Made by a program: the position numbers and the translations under genes. The notes below the pieces were generated by a model. The model had not been told where the DNA came from and did not search any database. It was given only the letters and a program-made list of their open reading frames with translations. DNA of 64,000 nt, taken from the IMG/VR virus record IMGVR_UViG_3300028416_000004, positions 168,515 to 232,514 of that record; one strand, 5' to 3'. This document shows, piece by piece, positions 6,576-64,000 of this stretch (position 1 is the stretch's first letter; each line of letters begins with the position of its first letter).

Positions 6576-9539
6576 ATGGCAGATATTATAAAAAAAATAA
6601 AAACCAATAAAGATGTAAATGTAATAACTTACTTTACGACAGTTGATGCGAGTTCAAAAGAAATTTTTGAAAAACTCAAAAATATTTCCAGTTTACCAAC
6701 TATAAATAGACAACTTAGAATTTGGGATACTATACAACAACAAGGAAAAGAAGCTTATGCAATAAAAGGAGCAAATAATAAAGTTGTTGAATTGTTAGAA
6801 ATGGTAGATGGTTCTTATTGTAAAAGAATACCTTTAACTAATGAATTTAAATTTTTATCTGAAGATGAAGAAAAGAATGTAGTTAAAGGTAAAGTTTTTT
6901 ATGCAAAACAAGATTATGTAAGACCATTAAAGAATGAAACTGTTGAAGAATTTATAGAACAAGCAATAGCTTACTCTGGAAATTCAGCATATTCAAATGT
7001 TTTTAATACAATTCAAAAAAAAACAGATTACTATGCTGACATAACTTTAAAAAGGAGTATAGATACACTCGATACTTTAAATGTCAAAAATAATCTTTTA
7101 TCTGAAGTACCAACTCAAGAGTCAGACACTGGTGTTGTATGTGGAACTTTAGTAGCTAGACAAAAAGTTTTAGATGAAAATGGAGAAAGAGCTTTAATTC
7201 CTTTGGCAAATGTTCCAATAGTTATTTTTAATCCTTCAGAAGAATTTCCTACATATACTTCTCAGGATGAAAATGGCAATAGAATAACTTTGAATGTCAT
7301 ACAAAATTCAGAACCAGAAGATTATTCAGATTTAAACTCTTATGTTTTAGATGTAGGTGTAGATAAGGCAAGAGAAGCTTTAGGGAGTAATGATGTTGGA
7401 GAGGAGTTTGATGGATTGAAACCTTTGTTAAAATCTGTTGAAAGTTTAAATTTACCTGAACATTATAAATATTCAACTATTACAAATGAAAAAGGAGAAT
7501 TTGTAATTCATGATGTACCTACTGGAAATCAAGTTTTATTATTTGAAGTAGATTTATTAAAACAAGGGATGAATAAAAGTGAAGTCGCCTTAAATTTCTT
7601 CCCATACACTAATGAAGAATTACCTAACATAGATAATGTACCTCATTTTTATTATAGGCAAATTCCAATCTCTGTAGTTTCTTCTTGGGGCGAATTTCAA
7701 ACTGGATTTACTGAAGTGAATATAACTTCTAATTTAGATATGAGAAAATGGTCTACTTTTTATGTATCTCCCATTTCTGTTGAAGATAATAATTTAGAAG
7801 AACTTTTTGCTTTAGGTAATTTTAGTAGATTAAATATTTTAGCTAAAGATATGACTAAAGAAGGATATCCTTTAACTACAGAAATAGTAGAAGTGGATGA
7901 TATTTTTTCTAGAGTTGAAAATCAAAGATTAGAGTGGTTTAATGAAAATAAATTTACTAAGTCACAGATTAATTTTAGTAAAAATAATTTTCAAACTTTT
8001 AAACTACCTGCTAATCTTTATGACCCAAATGGAATATCATCTAAAGATGGTGGAAGAACTAAATTAAATTCTAAAAAAGGTGTTTGGTTATGTTCTTATC
8101 AAATGAAAATGTATTACGAAGGAAATCCAGATGTTTATCGAACAACTGGATTTTTAAGAGATAAATTAGAAGAAAATGCTGTTCATTCAAGTCATTTTGA
8201 TGCTAATAGAGGTGTAGACTCTAATCCTTCTTCTGCTACTGGCAACGGATACAATACTTCTATCAACACTTTTCCATATGAAAGAACTTGGACAATAAAT
8301 TACCCAGAACCTTATAAAATACCTTCACTACCTATAGAATATAATGAAAAAGACTTCAATAATCAAGTTGAGCCTAGATATTTAGATGGTGATTTAGCTG
8401 GGTTTTATTATGGTCAAGAAGAATCAACAGGGTATGGACTTATGACTCCCTTAGAAGGAGGTGATGCTATATATAATAAATTTTCACAGACGATTACTAA
8501 AAGTAGAATATATAAATATGAAACAGATGTTTCTTGGCATGAAGAATATTCAAATGGATTTAGAAAATCACAACACTCTAATCTTTTTCAAGGTAAACAT
8601 TTTACTGTAAAAAGTGGAGAAAAGTATCAAAGAATAGAATGTGGATTTGCTTATTGGTTAAAACCAGAAGGTTGGGGTAGAATTAATAATCAAGGTTGGG
8701 GTGATATTATGTTAAATTCAGATATTAATTCAAATTATTCATCTTCAGACAATAAACTTATACCTCAATCTTATATAGGTGCAAATTATAGACAGAGTGA
8801 AAATTTATTATTAAAAATGGATAGCTCAATTTCTCCTTCATGGTTAAGACAAGGTGCTATTGATTTTTATAGAATTGTAGATGATTCTCCTCAATTTTTA
8901 GAAGAAAAAATACCATCACCAATTAAAAAGTATGGCAAAGTTGTAATTGAAAATATCTACACCAATAGAGAAAAGGCTATCTCTAGGCTTGAATTACGAA
9001 TAAGTAATAAAAAAAACTATAGAATGAGAATTTCACAAAATTCTGTTATTGAAATAACAAATAATGGTGCCATAAAATCTGAAATAACAGTTAATGGTGA
9101 TAAGAGACAAGTTGAACCAAAAAAATCTATCTCTTTTAATGTTGCATCTTATACTGAAATTACATTTACTTCAAATTTAGATTATGATATTCAAAAAAAT
9201 TCTTATGATACTTGTAATTATACATTTAAGTTTAAAAATAGTGAAATTAAGAAAGTAGACACTATAATTTATGATTATTATAACTTTACCTTAACAGCTG
9301 GTGAACAAACTCAAATACCAACTAGATATTTAGTTACGACAGTATATAGTGCTGAAGGTAATGTAAAAATCAAGAAAAAAGGAGTTAAGAAGTGTAAAAA
9401 AACATTCAATCAAGCAGGCACATATCAGATTAATGGTTTGATTTTTGAAAAAACTAAATCTTCATCAGCATTAAGCTTCACTTCATCACGAGTAGGTCAT
9501 GATTGTGCTGATGGTGGTATTAAAATTTTGAGAGTTTAA
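6576..9539 (+). CDS. Large virion structural protein with prealbumin/carboxypeptidase-regulatory-like domain
   Basis: 987 aa; YSTITNEKGEFVIHDVPTGNQVLLFEVD beta-sandwich motif; lies in the structural operon. Confidence 0.55.
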   Translation: MADIIKKIKTNKDVNVITYFTTVDASSKEIFEKLKNISSLPTINRQLRIWDTIQQQGKEAYAIKGANNKVVELLEMVDGSYCKRIPLTNEFKFLSEDEEKNVVKGKVFYAKQDYVRPLKNETVEEFIEQAIAYSGNSAYSNVFNTIQKKTDYYADITLKRSIDTLDTLNVKNNLLSEVPTQESDTGVVCGTLVARQKVLDENGERALIPLANVPIVIFNPSEEFPTYTSQDENGNRITLNVIQNSEPEDYSDLNSYVLDVGVDKAREALGSNDVGEEFDGLKPLLKSVESLNLPEHYKYSTITNEKGEFVIHDVPTGNQVLLFEVDLLKQGMNKSEVALNFFPYTNEELPNIDNVPHFYYRQIPISVVSSWGEFQTGFTEVNITSNLDMRKWSTFYVSPISVEDNNLEELFALGNFSRLNILAKDMTKEGYPLTTEIVEVDDIFSRVENQRLEWFNENKFTKSQINFSKNNFQTFKLPANLYDPNGISSKDGGRTKLNSKKGVWLCSYQMKMYYEGNPDVYRTTGFLRDKLEENAVHSSHFDANRGVDSNPSSATGNGYNTSINTFPYERTWTINYPEPYKIPSLPIEYNEKDFNNQVEPRYLDGDLAGFYYGQEESTGYGLMTPLEGGDAIYNKFSQTITKSRIYKYETDVSWHEEYSNGFRKSQHSNLFQGKHFTVKSGEKYQRIECGFAYWLKPEGWGRINNQGWGDIMLNSDINSNYSSSDNKLIPQSYIGANYRQSENLLLKMDSSISPSWLRQGAIDFYRIVDDSPQFLEEKIPSPIKKYGKVVIENIYTNREKAISRLELRISNKKNYRMRISQNSVIEITNNGAIKSEITVNGDKRQVEPKKSISFNVASYTEITFTSNLDYDIQKNSYDTCNYTFKFKNSEIKKVDTIIYDYYNFTLTAGEQTQIPTRYLVTTVYSAEGNVKIKKKGVKKCKKTFNQAGTYQINGLIFEKTKSSSALSFTSSRVGHDCADGGIKILRV

Positions 9540-27694: not shown

Positions 27695-30445
27695 TTATGC
27701 TAATGGAGTAAAGTTACCATAATAATCAGGGTTTACAGCAATTGCTTCTTGTCCGTAAATCACAACTGATGCTCCAGTTTCAGGTGCTACATTGAACGTG
27801 AAGGTACCTTGAGTGTTACCTTTAGCATCTACTACTGAACTGAAAGTATAATCAACATCTCTTTCTTGTAATAAACCATTTAAGTAGATTGCTCCACTTC
27901 CATTAATTAATACACTGAAATCTACAGTTACACCATCTCCGACTGCACTATTTAAAATCACAAACTTCCCGACATTAACAGCGTTTAAAATCATAGATTT
28001 GATTTCAACTAATGCTCCGTTAACACCATCTTTGATAGCTTGGTCGATTGAGTTTTGAACTGAAATCTCAGCAGATAACACAACTTCTAATGAAGCGTCA
28101 GCAGCAAGTCTTGCAGCTTTCTCTACAGAGTCAGCAGCTTCGAATGCAGCTGTTACAGCAGCGTCACCAGCAATTCTTGCGTTTTGTTCAGCTAAGTCAG
28201 CAGATTCTCTAGCAGCAACTTCAGTTGAGATATCAGCGTTTACTTTAGCTTCTAATGAAGCGTCAGCAGCTTCTCTAGCAGCAACTTCAGTTGAGATATC
28301 AGCGTTTACTTTACCTTCTAGTGAAGCGTCAGCAGATTCTCTAGCAGCAACTTCAGTTGATAAAGCAGCGTCATTACTCAATACGTAAGAAGCAAATGCT
28401 TGGTCGTTTTCAGTATCAACAGAGTTGATTAGTGTTACGATTTCAGCAAATGAATCTTTATCAGCATCAGAAGCCTCTAAGATAGCATCAATTCTACTTT
28501 TTTCAGTAGATACTTTAGCCTCTAATGAAGCGTCTCCTGAAACTCTCGCTGATTCTTCAGCAGATACGTCAGCATCGATTTTAGCTTCTAATGAACCATC
28601 AGCAGCAACTCTTGAACTAGCTTCAGAACTGATTGCAGCTTCTCTAGCAGCAACTTCAGTAGAGTATTCAATAGCGTGAGTTGATTCCTCAGTAGACAAT
28701 CTTAATTCTAATGAAGCATCAGCAGCAGCTCTAATACTAGCTTCAGCAGATACGTCACCTGTTACAGTAGCATCAAAGTTATCTAAAATTCCTTTAGTAA
28801 TGAATGATAAAGCATCATATCCAGCTAAACTATCTGGTTGAACACCAGCTTTGTTTAAACCTTCGAATGTTCTTTCTCCAGCTGTACCTTCAGCAATAAC
28901 ATCTTTCATTCTAATGTTGTTATCACCATCAACTTCGATTGTTACATCATCAGTTAAAGGTAATGCATCGATTTCAGCTTCCAATGAAGTATCACTAGCT
29001 AAACGAGTTGATTCTTCAGCATCTAATTCACTAACAACTTCTGCGAATGAATCGATTGAGTTTAAGTCAGTGTTAGCGATGATTGAAGAAACCTCACTTG
29101 ATAATACTGTAGCGATTGAATCTTCAGCTTCAGTAGCTCTTGAAATCTCAGCAGCTAATGCAACATCTAATGAACCATCAGCAGCAATTCTTGCAGCTTC
29201 TTCACTAGCTATAGATTCATTTAAATCCTTAGACTCAAGTTCGATTTTTTCATTTAATGAAGCATCAGCAGATACTCTTGAACTTACTTCAGATTCGATA
29301 GCTGTATCATGCTGAGCATCTTTAGCTGTAGCTCTAGCTATCTCAGCGTTTAATTCATTTTGAAGGTCAGTATCTGTATTTATCGCTCTAGTTATTTCGT
29401 CATCGATTTTAGCTTCTAATGAACCATCAGTAGCAATTCTTGCAGATTCTTCAGCTGACATGTCAGCATCGATTTTAGCTTCTAATGAACCATCAGCAGC
29501 AATTCTTGCAGATTCTTCAGCTGACATGTCAGCATCGATTTTAGCTTCTAATGAAGCGTCAGCAGCTTCTCTAGTAGCTTTCTCTACAGAGTCAGCAGCT
29601 TCGAATGCAGCCGTTACAGCAGCATCACCAGCAATTCTTGCGTTTTGTTCAGCTAAGTCAGCAGATTCTCTAGCAGAAACCTCAGTTGAGATATCAGCGT
29701 TTACTTTACCTTCTAATGAAGCGTCACCTGAAATTCTTGAAGATACTTCAGTTGATAAAGCAGCATCATTAGATAATACATAAGATGCAAATGCTTGGTC
29801 ATTTTCAGTATCAACAGAGTTGATTAATGTTACGATTTCAGCGAATGAATCTTTATCAGCATCAGAAGCCTCTAAAATAGCATCAATTCTACTTTTTTCA
29901 GTAGATACTTTAGCCTCTAATGAAGCGTCTCCTGAAACTCTCGCTGATTCTTCAGCAGATACGTCAGCATCGATTTTAGCCTCTAATGAAGCGTCTCCTG
30001 AAACTCTCGCTGATTCTTCAGCAGATACGTCAGCATCGATTTTAACTTCTAATGAACCTTCAGCATCTTTAGCTCTAGTAGTTTCATCACTGATTGATGT
30101 CTCTAATGAACCTTCAGCATCTTTAGCTCTAGCAACTTCAGCATCGATAGCTGCATCATGTTCAGCATCTTTTGCTTCAGCTCTAGCAACTTCAGCAGCG
30201 ATTTCAGCATCATGTTCAGCATCTTTTGCTTCAGCTCTACTCTTCTCGTTGGTAATTGCTTGTTCTAAATTTTGTAAGTCGTCAACTAACCCAGGTAAAT
30301 CTGATTTCTCAATACCAATTGGTCTTAAAATTTCAGCATCAGTCAATTTACCGTCTGATTGTTTATTTAAGATAATCCTAGTTCCACCTGTAAAATTGTT
30401 TGTTGGCTCTACTGGTGCTTCTAATAAAAATAATCTATTTTCCAT
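27695..30445 (-). CDS. Long repetitive coiled-coil tail fibre/whisker-like protein
   Basis: 916 aa Ala/Glu/Ser-rich 18/21/22-aa repeats (EESAR.AAD.SLEAKID), DSFAEIV motifs, and a C-terminal IYLNGLLQ..DY..F..AP..G domain also seen twice in 31808..32521. Confidence 0.7.
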   Translation of the reverse strand: MENRLFLLEAPVEPTNNFTGGTRIILNKQSDGKLTDAEILRPIGIEKSDLPGLVDDLQNLEQAITNEKSRAEAKDAEHDAEIAAEVARAEAKDAEHDAAIDAEVARAKDAEGSLETSISDETTRAKDAEGSLEVKIDADVSAEESARVSGDASLEAKIDADVSAEESARVSGDASLEAKVSTEKSRIDAILEASDADKDSFAEIVTLINSVDTENDQAFASYVLSNDAALSTEVSSRISGDASLEGKVNADISTEVSARESADLAEQNARIAGDAAVTAAFEAADSVEKATREAADASLEAKIDADMSAEESARIAADGSLEAKIDADMSAEESARIATDGSLEAKIDDEITRAINTDTDLQNELNAEIARATAKDAQHDTAIESEVSSRVSADASLNEKIELESKDLNESIASEEAARIAADGSLDVALAAEISRATEAEDSIATVLSSEVSSIIANTDLNSIDSFAEVVSELDAEESTRLASDTSLEAEIDALPLTDDVTIEVDGDNNIRMKDVIAEGTAGERTFEGLNKAGVQPDSLAGYDALSFITKGILDNFDATVTGDVSAEASIRAAADASLELRLSTEESTHAIEYSTEVAAREAAISSEASSRVAADGSLEAKIDADVSAEESARVSGDASLEAKVSTEKSRIDAILEASDADKDSFAEIVTLINSVDTENDQAFASYVLSNDAALSTEVAARESADASLEGKVNADISTEVAAREAADASLEAKVNADISTEVAARESADLAEQNARIAGDAAVTAAFEAADSVEKAARLAADASLEVVLSAEISVQNSIDQAIKDGVNGALVEIKSMILNAVNVGKFVILNSAVGDGVTVDFSVLINGSGAIYLNGLLQERDVDYTFSSVVDAKGNTQGTFTFNVAPETGASVVIYGQEAIAVNPDYYGNFTPLA
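28110..29995. repeat. Nested intragenic repeats (63/66-nt units; ~450-bp block duplicated at 1395/1461-nt offset)
   Basis: 28411 aligns to 29806 (offset 1395) and 28116 to 29577 (offset 1461); 63-nt tandem units at ~29403-29540 and ~29900-30050. Confidence 0.85.
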
Positions 30446-60622: not shown

Positions 60623-62521
60623 ATGACTTCAAATACAATTATTATTACAAAACTCAAAACAAATTATAAAATAGAATATAATTTTAGAAAAAATTTGAGT
60701 GACTTCATAAAAAGTTTTCCAGAAGACCAAAGGAAAATACAAGTAGAATATATACAAAATTCAGACGGTAGTACGTATGAAAATTGGTATAGAATAGTTT
60801 CTTCTGGATATATAGGTAAAGTTGTATCTTTTATAAAAGATAATGGTTTTCCATTTAAGTTTACTAATTTAACAAATGAAGAAGTTGAAGAATTAAGAAA
60901 AGAGTTTGAAAAGAGACAAGAATCTTTACTTAAAGCTTTATCTATGAAAACTGAAAATATAGATACTTCTCATATTGATTTTTCTTTTATGAATATAGAG
61001 CCATATGAATACCAAAAGAAAGCTGCTGTTTTTTTTGACACTTGTAATGGAAAAGCCTTACTTGGAGACCAACCAGGGGTAGGAAAAACTGCCTCTGCTA
61101 TGACTTACGCTGCTTGGAAAAAAAAGAAGACTCTAATAGTTTGTCCAGCAAACTTAAGACTTAATTGGAGGAGTGAAATACTTAAGTTTACTAAAGAGAA
61201 GGCGTTTGTTTATAAGTGGAAACCAACAAAAAAGTCAAAGAAAATAAATCACTCAAAAGATGAATCTATGTTCCACATAATAAGTTATAGTTCATTAGAC
61301 ACTTATATAACTATAGAGATGTCTCACAAATGTAAAAATGTATTTTGTGGCTGGAGTGAAAGAAATAGTAAAAAAAGATACAAAGATAAAGTTTGTCCAA
61401 GTTGTGGTGTTAGGAATATGGTAAATTCAAGAGCTACAAAAAATATATCCTTCACCCCAGACAAAGAAGGTCATCAATTGAATCCAAAAGATTATGAAAT
61501 ATTAATAATGGATGAAGCTCACTACATTAAAAACGACTCTGCAGATAGAACTAAATTAGCAAAGAAAACTTTAAAAGAAATACCTCAAAGATTATTATTG
61601 ACAGGCACAGCAATAAAAAGTAGACCATATGAATTTTATTCTTTGTTGAATTTTTTATATCCAGAAGAATGGAGTAATGCTCATTCATTTGGAATGAGGT
61701 ATTGTGCTGCAGAAAAGAATAATTTTGGATGGGATTATTCAGGTGCTTCTAATTTGGATGAATTATTTGAAAAGATTTCACCTTTCTTCTTGAGAAGATT
61801 AAAAAAAGATATATTAAAACATTTACCCCCAAAAACATATACAGTAATACCTATAGAGCTTAGTTCTTCTGAAATGTCTGAATATAACAAAATAAAAAAA
61901 GGAATTAAAGAAGAAATGAGTCAAGATGATAAAAATGCAGACAATAGAATGAATCACTTGACTAGGATTCAAAAGTTAAAAATGTTTACATCTGAAATAA
62001 AAATGAAAAAAGCTTTTGAGTTTATTCAAGATATCATAGATGGAGATGAAAAAGTTGTAGTATTTACTCAATATAAAAGTATTTCATATGAGGTAGTAAG
62101 CAAATTTGGAGACAAAGCAGTTGTTTTTAATGGAGATATAAATGCTAACAAAAAAGAAGAAGCAGTAGAAGCTTTTATGGATGATAAAAATATAAAGGTT
62201 TTTTCTGGTACAATTGGAGCGGCAGGTGTAGGAATAACTTTAACCTCTGCTAGTATTTCAATTTTTATAGACCAACCTTGGACTAGTGCTGATAGAGAAC
62301 AAGCAGAAGATAGAATACATAGAGCTTCTTCAAAAGCGGATAAAATACAAATAATTAGATTGGTCTGTCAAGATACTATAGATGAAGATATCGAAAAGTT
62401 GTTAAATCAAAAATCTTCAATTTTATCTAAAGTGTTAGATGGAAAAGAATTTGAGGAAACAGTAGAAGTTAAAGATGGTAGTATTTTTAATGATTTAGTA
62501 AGTTTGTTATATAATTCTTAA
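60623..62521 (+). CDS. SNF2/SWI2-family (SF2) helicase/annealing ATPase with Zn-finger insert
   Basis: LGDQPGVGKT, DEAH, LLTGT, LRRLKKDI, AAGVGITL and QAEDRIHR motifs; C.{4}C...C..C insert. Confidence 0.9.
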   Translation: MTSNTIIITKLKTNYKIEYNFRKNLSDFIKSFPEDQRKIQVEYIQNSDGSTYENWYRIVSSGYIGKVVSFIKDNGFPFKFTNLTNEEVEELRKEFEKRQESLLKALSMKTENIDTSHIDFSFMNIEPYEYQKKAAVFFDTCNGKALLGDQPGVGKTASAMTYAAWKKKKTLIVCPANLRLNWRSEILKFTKEKAFVYKWKPTKKSKKINHSKDESMFHIISYSSLDTYITIEMSHKCKNVFCGWSERNSKKRYKDKVCPSCGVRNMVNSRATKNISFTPDKEGHQLNPKDYEILIMDEAHYIKNDSADRTKLAKKTLKEIPQRLLLTGTAIKSRPYEFYSLLNFLYPEEWSNAHSFGMRYCAAEKNNFGWDYSGASNLDELFEKISPFFLRRLKKDILKHLPPKTYTVIPIELSSSEMSEYNKIKKGIKEEMSQDDKNADNRMNHLTRIQKLKMFTSEIKMKKAFEFIQDIIDGDEKVVVFTQYKSISYEVVSKFGDKAVVFNGDINANKKEEAVEAFMDDKNIKVFSGTIGAAGVGITLTSASISIFIDQPWTSADREQAEDRIHRASSKADKIQIIRLVCQDTIDEDIEKLLNQKSSILSKVLDGKEFEETVEVKDGSIFNDLVSLLYNS

Positions 62522-62550
62522 AAAAAATAAAAAAAAAAAATAAAAAAATA

Positions 62551-62581
62551 TTTGTTTTTTTGTAATGAACAATTAAATTTG
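62551..62581 (+). promoter_or_regulatory. Bacteroidota primary-sigma promoter driving the tRNA cluster
   Basis: TTTG (62551-54)-N19-TAAATTTG (62574-81), a full consensus match. Confidence 0.75.
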
Positions 62582-62627
62582 TCGTTATATAATAAAAAGC
62601 TCTTTGAAATAATGGAGATAATTAAAA

Positions 62628-62702
62628 GCTCCCATCGTCTATCGGTTAGGACATCAGGTTTTCATCCTGAAAAGCGGGGTTCGATTCCCCGTGGGAGTAC
62701 CA
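62628..62702 (+). tRNA. tRNA-Glu (TTC), CCA encoded
   Basis: Acceptor GCTCCCA/TGGGAGT; anticodon arm TCAGG-TTTTCAT-CCTGA; T-arm GCGGG-TTCGATT-CCCGT-like; ends ACCA. Confidence 0.92.
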
Positions 62703-62749
62703 CTTGTTTTTAATTTCATTATCACAAATAAGTGAAATATATAATATAT

Positions 62750-62821
62750 TGCGTGAAAGTGTAAAAGGTTGCATGGGACGCTCATAACATCTACGGGGTG
62801 GTTCGAATCCACAACACGCTA
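62750..62821 (+). tRNA. Degenerate tRNA with CAT anticodon (Met-like; possibly a pseudo-tRNA)
   Basis: Cloverleaf with CTCATAA loop and GGTTCGAATCC T-arm, but mismatches at 1:72, 7:66, 30:40 and 49:65, A at position 8, and no CCA. Confidence 0.55.
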
Positions 62822-62870
62822 CAAAGATTTAGAGTAATTAACTAAATCTTGTCTAGTTCGAAATAGACGA

Positions 62871-62944
62871 TTGAATATAGTGTAAGAGGCACGGAAAAAG
62901 GTAATACGGACTCAAGATTAAGGTTCGATTCATTATTATTCAAC
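62871..62944 (+). ncRNA. tRNA-like element lacking a foldable anticodon arm
   Basis: TTGAATA/TATTCAA acceptor-like stem, TA-GTGT..GCAC D-arm, GGTTCGATTC T-loop; the 25-nt middle has no stem. Confidence 0.45.
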
Positions 62945-63160
62945 TAGTGAGTAAGAGGTGCTCATAGAGTTTGTAGGTAACTCCACAACAAAACCTTCCC
63001 CCAAAGTCTCATGTAGGGTTATGAGTGAGGTATGTGGAATCAGGGCGGAAAGTCCTCCTACCCCCACATTAAGGACTGACGTTTTCAGTGGGTAAGACCA
63101 ACAGGTTTTAGAAAAAGGAAAAAACCGATATATCTAGCATATGTAATCTCAATATGTGAC
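62945..63160 (+). ncRNA. Unassigned structured RNA candidate A
   Basis: GC-richer intergenic stretch with several stems and a loop-bulge pairing GTAGG/CCTAC (see findings). Confidence 0.5.
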
Positions 63161-63164
63161 ATTT

Positions 63165-63238
63165 GCACCCATAGCTCAGCTGAATAGAGCAATTCACTTC
63201 TAATGAATAGGTCCCAGGTTTGAATCCTGGTGGGTGTA
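63165..63238 (+). tRNA. tRNA-Arg (TCT)
   Basis: GCACCCA/TGGGTGT acceptor; ATTCA-CTTCTAA-TGAAT anticodon arm; CCAGG-TTTGAAT-CCTGG T-arm. Confidence 0.9.
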
Positions 63239-63424
63239 CTAAAAAAAGTGATAAGTTCCAAACAAATAATTAGCTCTACCAGGGCACAAATCCGTGTGAG
63301 GTTATCTAATGTGAGGAATTTCTTTTAATATCACACCTATACATAGGTCGAAAAGATATATAAAAAATGGATTTATTTAATACTAGTCAAAATAAATTGT
63401 TTATATTAAAAGATAGCTTTTTAA

Positions 63425-63498
63425 GGTCCTTTAACTCAGTTGGTTAGAGTAACTGACTCATAATCAGTAGGTCGATGGTTCGAGTCCATCAAGGACCA
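63425..63498 (+). tRNA. tRNA with CAT anticodon, most likely Ile2 (lysidine-modified)
   Basis: GGTCCTT/AAGGACC acceptor with C4-G69 and C5-G68 (TilS determinants in E. coli); ACTGA-CTCATAA-TCAGT arm. Confidence 0.85.
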
Positions 63499-63512
63499 CA
63501 TATTAAACTAGT

Positions 63513-63785
63513 CTCCAGAAACTTCTTTTATGTAAAGCCTAAGTTGCTAAGGTAAGAATGATAGCAGTTTCTCACAATCGATTAAGCACTACATGACAAT
63601 TGTGAGGATGTAGTAATAAACTTGCATAATAAGAAGTTTCAAATGGAGTATTTCACATTGTCGGTTTGGTGGATGTGATACACGACCCTTAGACGTAAGG
63701 GCTACTCTTAATAATAAGTTGTAATCGCCCAGGGTAACGGGGACAACCAATATAGAGAAAAGCAGTTAAAATCTGTAGGCCGACA
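63513..63785 (+). ncRNA. Unassigned structured RNA candidate B (pseudoknotted domain plus multibranch domain)
   Basis: Long-range stems 63513-35/63622-48 and 63659-68/63776-85; H-type pseudoknot at 63571-63614. Confidence 0.65.
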
Positions 63786-63799
63786 CATTATTTATAAAC

Positions 63800-63873
63800 T
63801 CCTCCTTAGTTCAGTTGGTTAGAACATTTGACTGTTAATCAAAGGGTCCTTGGTTCGAGTCCAAGAGGGGGAG
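63800..63873 (+). tRNA. tRNA-Asn (GTT)
   Basis: TCCTCCT/AGGGGGA acceptor with G73; TTTGA-CTGTTAA-TCAAA arm; CTTGG-TTCGAGT-CCAAG T-arm. Confidence 0.92.
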
Positions 63874-64000
63874 CTTTTTTTTTTTAAAAAAATGTTAAAT
63901 ATATTTATTCTTTTTTTTACGATTATTTCTTTTAATAAACTTTATACCTCTAGAATATTTTTCTCTATGCCTAATCATAGCGTTTTTCATTCTTAAATCT

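What the first reader, a model, noticed from the sequence alone, without database searches (positions are those of the whole stretch)
63654..63785. Structured RNA candidate B, 3' domain: multibranch fold ending just before tRNA-Asn
Seen: TGTCGGTTTG 63659-68 / TAGGCCGACA 63776-85 closes hairpins CCCTTA-GACG-TAAGGG (63686-701), GTTGT 63718-22 / ACAAC 63743-47 with CCC/GGG and a G-GTAA-C GNRA cap, CTCT/AGAG, and GCAG-TTAAAAT-CTGT. An alternative stem TCACAT 63653-58 / ATGTGA 63673-78 would place the 5' closing strand in a loop, giving a pseudoknot or switch. It begins about 10 nt after the 5' domain, so the two may be one ~270-nt RNA.
Basis: partly seen in the sequence, partly recalled or inferred. 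Interest (0 to 1): 0.65.

Follow-up and report, generated by a model that had tools for sequence, protein, structure and literature searches.

The report
Orphan structured spacer in phage tRNA operon
It occurs in only one phage species, so its structure cannot be tested by comparison and it remains an unproven candidate.

Summary
**Observation.** ViennaRNA's minimum-energy fold reproduces the multibranch shape: a 9-bp closing helix (63659-67/63777-85) around four hairpins.

**Setting.** The element lies on the tRNA strand inside a phage tRNA operon: promoter-like site, tRNA-Glu, Arg, Met, this spacer, tRNA-Asn, T11 run.

**For a real RNA**
- It is a sharp G+C island: 44% against 27.5%, the top 0.65% of 132-nt windows.
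- The island's borders match the closing helix.
- All five polymorphic sites in 63654-63799 fall at unpaired positions.

**Against**
- Folding energy is not better than shuffles (z about -1.3).
- There is no Rfam match, even at E<=10 on 311 nt.
- It shows no similarity to tRNAs or to T4 rnaC/rnaD.
- No homologue turned up in IMG/VR, JGI metagenomes, GTDB genomes or GenBank phages, apart from near-identical copies of the same phage.
- Relatives with 77-87% helicase identity lack it.

**Switch or pseudoknot.** The proposed alternative stem has pair probability 0.001 and could not form a pseudoknot for steric reasons.

**Best reading (about 0.4).** It is a lineage-specific spacer RNA cut out of the tRNA precursor. 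Its closing helix stacks on a T-loop-like hairpin, the layout of T4 species 1 RNA.

**Main rival.** It is a functionless relic.

**Rating.** Modest interest.

The parts
62566..62593 (+). Promoter-like site (TGAACA-16-TATAAT) after the SNF2 helicase gene and ahead of tRNA-Glu. It is the presumed start of the tRNA operon.
   Evidence: Consensus scan, 10 of 12 matches. The surrounding leader is 72-77% identical to the stretch ahead of the first tRNA in relatives.
62628..62702 (+). tRNA-Glu (UUC)
   Evidence: ARAGORN; Rfam tRNA 58.9 bits.
63165..63239 (+). tRNA-Arg (UCU)
63425..63499 (+). tRNA-Met (CAU), the upstream border of spacer B
   Evidence: 74.7 bits.
63513..63648 (+). 5' domain of spacer B. 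A roughly 23-bp interrupted closing helix (63513-35 / 63626-48) encloses two hairpins.
   Evidence: MFE -36.6 kcal/mol, z -3.43, 1 of 200 shuffles as good. Perfect 10-nt inverted repeat 63518-27 / 63631-40.
63659..63785 (+). 3' domain of spacer B (the finding). A 9-bp closing helix 63659-67 / 63777-85 (two G-U pairs) encloses four hairpins.
   Evidence: Folds; pair probabilities; G+C island.
63669..63683 (+). Weak 3-bp hairpin GTG / CAC with a 9-nt loop
   Evidence: Pair probability 0.55.
63686..63701 (+). Hairpin CCCTTA-GACG-TAAGGG (6 bp, 4-nt loop)
   Evidence: Probability about 0.97; perfect inverted repeat I15.
63706..63758 (+). Long interrupted arm: TCTT/GAGA, TAA/TAT (63711-13/63751-53), GTTG/CAAC (63718-21/63744-47), TC/GA and CCC/GGG, capped by the loop AGGGUAAC
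   Evidence: MFE. GTTGT/ACAAC has probability about 0.94; the apical CCC/GGG register is uncertain.
63762..63776 (+). T-arm-like hairpin GCAG-UUAAAAU-CUGU. It has a 7-nt loop that fits the T-loop pattern UUNRA, is closed by a G-C pair, and abuts the 3' strand of the closing helix directly.
   Evidence: Probability 0.64. The layout matches the T-arm of T4 rnaC. The loop polymorphism 63772 U/C keeps a pyrimidine.
63786..63799 (+). AT-rich 14-nt linker to tRNA-Asn, with three substitutions in one haplotype
63800..63874 (+). tRNA-Asn (GUU), the downstream border
   Evidence: 68.6 bits.
63875..63885 (+). Run of 11 T directly after tRNA-Asn, the presumed end of the operon transcript
   Evidence: Read from the sequence. 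The terminator scan did not call it, so termination here is inferred.

Best explanation
Region 63659-63785 is the 3' half of a roughly 300-nt transcribed spacer (63500-63799) in a phage tRNA operon. I propose the following, all inferred except the anatomy.

1. The operon is transcribed from the promoter-like site at 62566-93 to the T11 run at 63875-85.
2. Host tRNA-processing enzymes release the spacer. 3' trimming behind tRNA-Met sets one end, and RNase P cleavage at 63799/63800, ahead of tRNA-Asn, sets the other.
3. The two compact domains survive as one or two small stable RNAs. This would parallel the species 2 and species 1 RNAs (119 and 139 nt) that phage T4 makes from its tRNA precursor.

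In the 3' domain, the 9-bp closing helix stacks on the adjoining 4-bp hairpin with its 7-nt T-loop-like loop. That gives about 13 bp, close to the 12-bp acceptor/T-arm stack of a tRNA. RNase P could therefore also cut at 63658/63659 and separate the two domains.

What the released RNA then does is unknown. A tRNA-shaped decoy or a binding partner for tRNA-handling proteins is the most natural guess.
For: **Shown**
- The fold is the MFE and is robust in the ensemble.
- It shares strand and transcription unit with four tRNAs. A promoter-like site lies upstream, and no terminator-like site was called anywhere in 62000-64000.
- G+C is 43.9% against 27.5% for the window, the top 0.65% of 132-nt windows. 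Outside one coding region and spacer A it is the only such island, and its borders equal the closing helix.
- There is no ORF on the operon strand, and the 53-aa reverse-strand ORF matches no PHROG family.
- All 5 polymorphic sites in 63654-63799 across 4 haplotypes lie at unpaired positions. With 70 of 146 positions unpaired, the naive chance is about 0.03.
- Recognisable decayed tRNAs elsewhere in the clade still score 20-28 bits against the tRNA model. This spacer scores nothing at E<=10 and is no more tRNA-like than its shuffles. It is therefore not simply a recently decayed tRNA, yet it keeps tRNA-level G+C in an AT-rich genome.

**Precedent**
- T4 rnaD and rnaC lie side by side in the T4 tRNA cluster and come from the same primary transcript as the eight tRNAs (PMC2330249).
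- Folded here, rnaC has a closing helix of its two ends with a T-arm abutting its 3' strand.
- The accepted stable RNA rnaD has z of only -0.83, so a weak z-score does not exclude a real RNA.
- Relatives of this phage carry other ORF-free blocks behind tRNA-Met that are more conserved than the flanking genes.
Against: - No homologue exists, so there is no covariation. BLAST and a covariance model find the element only in near-identical genomes.
- Relatives at 77-87% helicase identity have tRNA-Arg and tRNA-Met adjacent and lack the spacer.
- The energy of the 3' domain is within the shuffle range.
- The reverse strand of the whole spacer folds as well or better.
- The T-loop likeness rests on 7 nt noticed after the fact. 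The hairpin has 4 bp rather than 5, and the tRNA model gives no hit.
- Three of the five polymorphisms belong to one haplotype tract that begins at 63786, so they are not independent events.
- There are no expression data.
Confidence: 0.4

Rival explanations
1. The spacer is a functionless relic: leftover DNA from tRNA-array turnover or from a mobile insertion. It is transcribed passively and its fold is incidental.
For: - tRNA arrays in this clade are highly fluid, with 2 to 13 tRNAs and different orders.
- Other spacers hold decayed tRNAs: window 62750-62821 at 20 bits and L011 8694-8777 at 27.7 bits.
- The neighbourhood is rich in mobile elements. There is a group I intron in tRNA-Met of L008, inteins in helicase homologues and an HNH endonuclease 1.3 kb downstream.
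- The element is confined to one species.
- Its energy is not significant.
Against: - It has no detectable tRNA or intron similarity, even under very lax thresholds.
- A neutral relic in a 27% G+C genome should drift towards the 17-26% G+C of neighbouring non-coding DNA. This one holds 44% with sharp borders at the closing helix.
- Its polymorphisms avoid the helices.
Confidence: 0.33
2. The spacer is a cis-acting processing or insulating element, not an RNA with a job of its own. Its structure keeps neighbouring tRNAs from misfolding with each other and offers nuclease entry sites. In particular, the roughly 23-bp helix of the 5' domain could be an RNase III site.
For: - The spacer sits between two tRNAs in one transcription unit.
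- The 5' domain has a long, near-perfect duplex.
- From my own knowledge: T4 and T7 early transcripts and T4 tRNA precursors are processed at such hairpins.
Against: - Close relatives manage with 6-nt spacers between tRNA-Arg and tRNA-Met, so no long structured spacer is needed for processing.
- A four-hairpin domain is more elaborate than a cleavage site requires.
Confidence: 0.17
3. The 3' domain is a conformational switch or pseudoknot, toggling between TCACAT/ATGTGA and the closing helix.
For: - The stem exists and can be extended to 9 of 11 pairs, 63648-58 / 63673-83.
- It would form first during transcription.
- The 63656 C/T polymorphism keeps pairing as G-U.
Against: - Its equilibrium pair probability is 0.001.
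- There are zero nucleotides between it and the 9-bp closing helix, so the two cannot coexist as an H-type pseudoknot.
- Six-base inverted repeats occur at chance frequency here.
- There is no riboswitch or other Rfam match.
- No regulated gene lies downstream, only a tRNA.
Confidence: 0.03
4. It is not an RNA element at all but a small reverse-strand protein gene (63589-63750, 53 aa, TTG start) or a DNA-level site such as a protein-binding or recombination site.
For: - The ORF exists.
- The reverse strand folds about as well, as expected for Watson-Crick palindromes that could act in DNA.
- A haplotype boundary lies at 63786.
Against: - The ORF has a TTG start, matches no PHROG family and runs against the operon.
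- The closing helix and the last hairpin use three G-U pairs that would be A-C mismatches on the other strand.
- The motif is not repeated elsewhere in the window.
Confidence: 0.05

Closest known systems
Phage T4 species 1 (rnaC, 139 nt) and species 2 (rnaD, 119 nt) stable RNAs of the tRNA gene cluster
   Same: - Both are two adjacent non-tRNA, non-coding domains of about 120-150 nt each, inside a phage tRNA cluster and on the tRNA strand.
- The T4 RNAs come from the same primary transcript as the tRNAs (PMC2330249).
- rnaC has a closing helix made of its two ends with a 7-nt-loop hairpin abutting the 3' strand, as the 3' domain does here.
- Function is unknown in both cases.
   Different: - There is no sequence similarity: alignment scores are within shuffles, and the covariance model of the 3' domain finds nothing in the T4 locus.
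- rnaC carries a canonical T-arm (GGGUUCGAAUCCC). Here the loop is UUAAAAU on a 4-bp stem.
- The T4 RNAs sit at the end of the cluster; here a tRNA follows.
- The host phage is unrelated.
ROOL and GOLLD large ornate RNAs of phages and prophages
   Same: They are non-coding structured RNAs of unknown function, encoded by phages, often near tRNA islands. One GOLLD was first seen downstream of a Met-tRNA, and tRNAs sometimes lie inside GOLLD (PMC12286853).
   Different: They are far larger (roughly 580 to over 800 nt) and are conserved families with strong covariation. The Rfam library, which holds both models, gives no match here even at E<=10.
Decayed or non-canonical tRNA genes in phage tRNA arrays
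   Same: Location, strand and tRNA-like G+C content match. The clade has clear examples at window 62750-62821 and L011 8694-8777.
   Different: There is no tRNA-model hit at E<=10 on 311 nt, no ARAGORN call at relaxed thresholds, and no similarity to any of 43 distinct tRNAs of the clade beyond shuffles. The 6-bp/4-nt-loop hairpin and the 53-nt arm do not fit a cloverleaf.

Membership tests
T4-type tRNA-cluster stable RNAs (species 1 / rnaC) | Encoded within a phage tRNA gene cluster, on the tRNA strand | tested here: met
   The element lies between tRNA-Met and tRNA-Asn on the + strand. T4 has the same arrangement.
T4-type tRNA-cluster stable RNAs (species 1 / rnaC) | Sequence homology to T4 rnaC or rnaD | tested here: not met
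   Local alignment scores are within shuffles. Model R1 gives no hit in L027.
T4-type tRNA-cluster stable RNAs (species 1 / rnaC) | Closing helix of the 5' and 3' ends, with a canonical T-arm abutting its 3' strand | tested here: inconclusive
   The closing helix and an abutting 7-nt-loop hairpin are present. However, the loop is UUAAAAU, the stem is only 4 bp, and the tRNA model gives no hit.
T4-type tRNA-cluster stable RNAs (species 1 / rnaC) | Accumulates as a discrete stable RNA processed from the tRNA precursor | not testable with these tools
   This needs a Northern blot or RNA-seq of infected cells.
tRNA (Rfam RF00005), including pseudogenes | Cloverleaf recognised by the covariance model or by ARAGORN | tested here: not met
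   There is no hit at E<=10 in 63495-63805, and none on the + strand with ARAGORN at relaxed thresholds or with introns allowed.
Group I intron (RF00028) | Match to the catalytic core model, and insertion within a gene | tested here: not met
   There is no hit at E<=10, and both flanking tRNAs are intact. A relative, L008, does have one in tRNA-Met at 80.8 bits, so the model works in this clade.
GOLLD / ROOL ornate RNAs | Match to the Rfam models; size above 500 nt | tested here: not met
   There are no matches. The spacer is 300 nt.
Self-cleaving ribozymes, riboswitches, tmRNA, T-box (all Rfam 15 families) | Covariance-model match | tested here: not met
   The only hit at E<=10 is a chance 15.4-bit match of the 5' domain to SpR19. 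ARAGORN finds no tmRNA.

The most novel reading that the evidence does not exclude
The 3' domain is a new, lineage-specific tRNA-mimicking RNA. Its acceptor/T-loop-like minihelix makes it an RNase P substrate, so a roughly 127-nt stable RNA is cut out of the phage tRNA precursor. That RNA then acts in trans during infection, for example as a decoy for host tRNA-targeting nucleases or tRNA-binding enzymes. It would be a functional analogue of T4 species 1 RNA that arose independently.
Probability: 0.15. Interest if true: 0.55.

Novelty: new member of a known kind. Interest (0 to 1): 0.3.

Why it matters
Small stable RNAs embedded in phage tRNA clusters have been known since the T4 species 1 and 2 RNAs, and their function is still unknown. 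ROOL and GOLLD, which also sit near phage tRNA islands, are equally unexplained.

An independent example in an uncultured marine jumbo phage would show that such RNAs arise repeatedly. This is more so because relatives carry their own, unrelated conserved non-coding blocks at the same position. It would also give another system in which to ask what these RNAs do.

As it stands, the element is a single-species orphan with no comparative support, so its value is as a lead for transcript mapping rather than as a finding.

Tried and rejected
**Searches for homologues that found nothing**
- BLAST of 62500-64000 against 50,697 GenBank phages returned only tRNA matches.
- BLAST of spacer B against 22 related loci returned only four near-identical copies.
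- Three scans of IMG/VR with motifs from within spacer B, plus one with a motif from the adjoining tRNA-Asn gene, returned only the same contigs of this phage. The pattern was too long to find anything but identical copies.
- One scan of JGI metagenomes gave one identical 240,856-bp contig plus two chance 19-20-mers in unrelated G+C-rich DNA.
- Two scans of 185,579 GTDB genomes gave nothing.

**Attempts to find intermediate relatives**
- A protein search with the neighbouring helicase found nothing between 86% and 100% identity.
- An exact-protein look-up gave 18 contigs but no new haplotype.

**Model and family searches**
- A covariance model of the 3' domain (R1) found nothing in the window, the relatives or the T4 tRNA cluster.
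- Rfam at E<=10 on 2 kb and on 311 nt found nothing.
- ARAGORN with relaxed scores and with introns allowed found no tRNA in the spacer.

**Ideas tested and dropped**
- Decayed tRNA-His/Asp, which precede tRNA-Asn in relatives: similarity to 43 distinct clade tRNAs is no better than for shuffles.
- Homology to T4 rnaC/rnaD: none.
- Homology to the conserved blocks X1/X2 of relatives: none.
- A repeated promoter motif overlapping the closing helix: ATTTGTCGTTA is not enriched in the window.
- A small protein: no family match for the three short ORFs.
- An H-type pseudoknot in the 5' domain (CTCACAAT/ATTGTGAG with ACTACAT/ATGTAGT): only 1 nt would have to span an 8-bp helix, so the two helices are alternatives.

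**Failed run**
- A first ensemble-diversity script timed out. The rerun used mononucleotide shuffles and showed no unusual well-definedness for the 3' domain: 31% of shuffles were as well defined.

Full report
**Context**

The window is AT-rich at 27.5% G+C and belongs to a large uncultured phage.
- Neighbouring genes include an endolysin (PG_binding_1 plus Amidase_2), an SbcC-like nuclease and an SNF2 helicase.
- Identical or near-identical sequence lies on IMG/VR and metagenome contigs of up to 232-241 kb.

Directly after the helicase gene (60623-62521) comes a tRNA operon on the + strand:

| Feature | Coordinates |
|---|---|
| promoter-like site | 62566-93 |
| tRNA-Glu | 62628-702 |
| spacer A (462 nt) | 62703-63164 |
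| tRNA-Arg | 63165-239 |
| spacer C (185 nt) | 63240-63424 |
| tRNA-Met | 63425-499 |
| spacer B (300 nt) | 63500-63799 |
| tRNA-Asn | 63800-874 |
| run of 11 T | 63875-85 |

The finding is the 3' half of spacer B.

**Checking the observation**

All quoted stems are at the quoted coordinates. ViennaRNA's MFE structure for 63654-63785 is the multibranch fold described. A 9-bp closing helix, 63659-67/63777-85 with two G-U pairs, encloses four elements:
- a weak 3-bp hairpin
- CCCTTA-GACG-TAAGGG
- a long interrupted arm, 63706-58
- GCAG-UUAAAAU-CUGU

In the partition function:

| Helix | Pair probability |
|---|---|
| closing helix | 0.9-1.0 for seven of its nine pairs (end pairs 0.47 and 0.74) |
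| CCCTTA hairpin | about 0.97 |
| GTTGT/ACAAC | about 0.94 |
| last hairpin | 0.64 |
| first hairpin | 0.55 |

The GNRA-capped variant of the apical hairpin is a minor conformer, at about 0.1.

The energy is not unusual for the composition: z -1.38, with 19 of 200 dinucleotide shuffles as good, and z -1.22 with the 3' tail. Six-base inverted repeats occur at roughly chance density. The 5' domain (63513-63648) is clearly better than chance, at z -3.43. The whole spacer has z -2.18 on the + strand and -3.44 on the - strand, so energy alone does not fix the strand. The three G-U pairs of the 3' domain do favour the + strand.

**What stands out**

Composition is the strongest signal. The 3' domain is 43.9% G+C, and only 0.65% of 132-nt windows reach that. 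Those windows fall in one coding region (28-30 kb), in spacer A, and here. The island's limits, 63653-63787, coincide with the closing helix. In the near-identical locus L005, non-tRNA stretches of 40% G+C or more are rare.

The operon strand has no ORF of 20 aa or more within the spacer. A 53-aa reverse-strand ORF with a TTG start matches no PHROG family.

**Search for relatives**

This is where the case stalls.
- BLAST against GenBank phages finds only the tRNAs.
- Twenty-two loci encoding helicase relatives were fetched. Spacer B occurs only in the four with a 100% identical helicase.
- Phages with 77-87% identical helicases have tRNA-Arg and tRNA-Met 6 nt apart and no tRNA-Glu, spacer B or tRNA-Asn. 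Others have arrays of 9-13 tRNAs in which tRNA-Asp precedes tRNA-Asn.
- The protein database holds no helicase between 86% and 100% identity.
- Exact-motif scans of IMG/VR, JGI metagenomes and GTDB genomes return only the same phage or chance 19-20-mers.
- A covariance model of the 3' domain with its MFE structure (R1) finds only the copies of the same element in the near-identical contigs. It finds nothing else in 338 kb of window, relatives and the T4 tRNA cluster.
- Rfam 15 gives nothing, even when only 311 nt are searched at E<=10.

**Population variation**

Eighteen contigs carry the identical helicase, and the copies read fall into four haplotypes. The roughly 9 kb upstream of 63656 is invariant. 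The variable sites are:
- 63656 (C/T), 3 nt before the closing helix
- 63772 (U/C), in the loop of the last hairpin
- 63786, 63790 and 63793, in the linker
- four sites in tRNA-Asn

All five sites within 63654-63799 are unpaired in the MFE. With 70 of 146 positions unpaired, the naive chance of that is about 0.03. The three linker changes belong to one haplotype tract that continues into tRNA-Asn, so this is at most a hint of constraint.

**What it is not**

It is not a recognisable decayed tRNA.
- Other spacers of the clade contain relics that the tRNA model still scores: window 62750-62821 at 20 bits, with a CAU anticodon and several mismatched pairs, and L011 8694-8777 at 27.7 bits, with acceptor and T-arm intact.
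- Spacer B gives no tRNA hit and no ARAGORN call at relaxed thresholds.
- It aligns to the 43 distinct tRNAs of the clade no better than its shuffles do.

It is not a group I intron, although one interrupts tRNA-Met in relative L008 (RF00028, 80.8 bits). It is not GOLLD, ROOL, a ribozyme, a riboswitch or a tmRNA, as far as Rfam and ARAGORN can tell.

**The switch or pseudoknot idea**

The stem TCACAT/ATGTGA extends to 9 of 11 pairs but has equilibrium probability 0.001. Its 5' strand ends at 63658 and the closing helix starts at 63659. A pseudoknot would need a 0-nt loop to cross a 9-bp helix, which is sterically implausible. At most it is a transient co-transcriptional hairpin.

**Closest known analogue**

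In T4, rnaD (119 nt) and rnaC (139 nt) lie 6 nt apart directly behind tRNA-Arg. They are made from the same primary transcript as the eight tRNAs (PMC2330249). Folded with the same tool, rnaC shows a closing helix of its two ends and a canonical T-arm abutting the 3' strand (z -4.57). rnaD has z of only -0.83, so real stable RNAs of this size need not beat shuffles.

The 3' domain of spacer B has the same outline. Its last hairpin has these features:
- a 7-nt loop, UUAAAAU, which fits the T-loop pattern UUNRA
- a G-C closing pair
- a pyrimidine kept at the last loop position by the only polymorphism
- direct abutment on the closing helix, giving about 13 stacked pairs against 12 in a tRNA's acceptor/T-arm

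This resemblance was noticed after the fact and rests on few nucleotides. There is no sequence homology to the T4 RNAs.

**Supporting context from relatives**

Five relatives (L004, L008, L009, L012, L020) carry about 480-590 nt without ORFs behind tRNA-Met. These stretches are 83-91% identical to one another, while the flanking genes are 70-80% identical.
- Block X1 ends in a bidirectional intrinsic terminator.
- Block X2 follows it.
- Neither has an Rfam match.
- The 3' 190 nt of X1 also occur in three contigs where the loci fetched around the match hold no tRNA.

These blocks are unrelated in sequence to spacer B. They do show that the tail of the tRNA operon in this clade is a place where constrained non-coding sequence lives. 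ROOL and GOLLD are likewise reported near phage tRNA islands (PMC12286853).

**Verdict**

| Explanation | Confidence |
|---|---|
| Lineage-specific structured spacer RNA released from the tRNA precursor by ordinary tRNA processing, possibly split by RNase P at 63658/59; function unknown | about 0.4 |
| Functionless relic of tRNA-array turnover or of a mobile insertion | about 0.33 |
| Purely cis-acting processing or insulating structure | about 0.17 |
| Conformational switch | about 0.03 |
| Reverse-strand micro-ORF or DNA-level site | about 0.05 |

No comparison with homologues can decide among these, because the element is an orphan. Transcript mapping and RNase P/III assays would.

Noticed in passing
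window 62703-63164 (spacer A): Spacer A contains a degenerate tRNA with a CAU anticodon at 62750-62821 (Rfam tRNA 20 bits, several mismatched pairs). ARAGORN calls a tRNA-Val-like element at 62872-62944 only at low thresholds. A second G+C island at 62931-63139 (up to 51% G+C) has no Rfam match.
   Followed up: partly
window 63240-63424 (spacer C); L011 8942-9127: This AT-rich spacer upstream of tRNA-Met is about 79-80% identical over about 187 nt to the stretch upstream of tRNA-Met in relative L011. The L004-type relatives lack it. It may be a conserved leader or internal promoter.
   Followed up: no
L008 10074-10390: The tRNA-Met gene of a related phage is interrupted after the CAT anticodon by a group I intron of about 240 nt (Rfam RF00028, 80.8 bits, E 1e-18).
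   Followed up: partly
L004 8547-8807 and 8823-9030 (also L008, L009, L012, L020; alignments A3, A4): Two ORF-free, G+C-rich blocks (X1, X2) lie behind tRNA-Met in relatives. They are 83-91% identical between phages whose flanking genes are only 70-80% identical. X1 ends in a bidirectional intrinsic terminator. Neither has an Rfam match. They are candidate novel non-coding RNAs. The 3' 190 nt of X1 also occur in L036, L039 and L041, loci in which no tRNA was found.
   Followed up: partly
L011 8640-8777: Two tRNA-like elements have intact acceptor stems and canonical T-arms but aberrant D and anticodon regions (tRNA model 27.7 bits for 8694-8777). This is the same outline as T4 species 1 RNA.
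   Followed up: no
proteins P0001, P0017, P0019-P0021 and others (homologues of window 60623-62521): Several homologues of the SNF2 helicase are about 980 aa rather than about 630 aa and carry intein/homing-endonuclease domains (PF05204, PF14528). The window's copy has no intein.
   Followed up: no
window 63786-63849 versus L001, L033, L034: One haplotype is identical to the window for about 9 kb upstream. From 63786 on it carries 7 substitutions in 64 nt, four of them in tRNA-Asn. This suggests a recombination boundary at the 3' edge of the structured domain. An HNH endonuclease gene lies about 1.3 kb downstream (L005 10601-11089).
   Followed up: partly
window 28030-30263 (within ORF 27695-30445, minus strand): Apart from the tRNA-operon spacers, this is the only part of the window that reaches 44% G+C or more in 132-nt windows. 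It lies within a 916-aa ORF that has only a weak PHROG match of unknown function.
   Followed up: no
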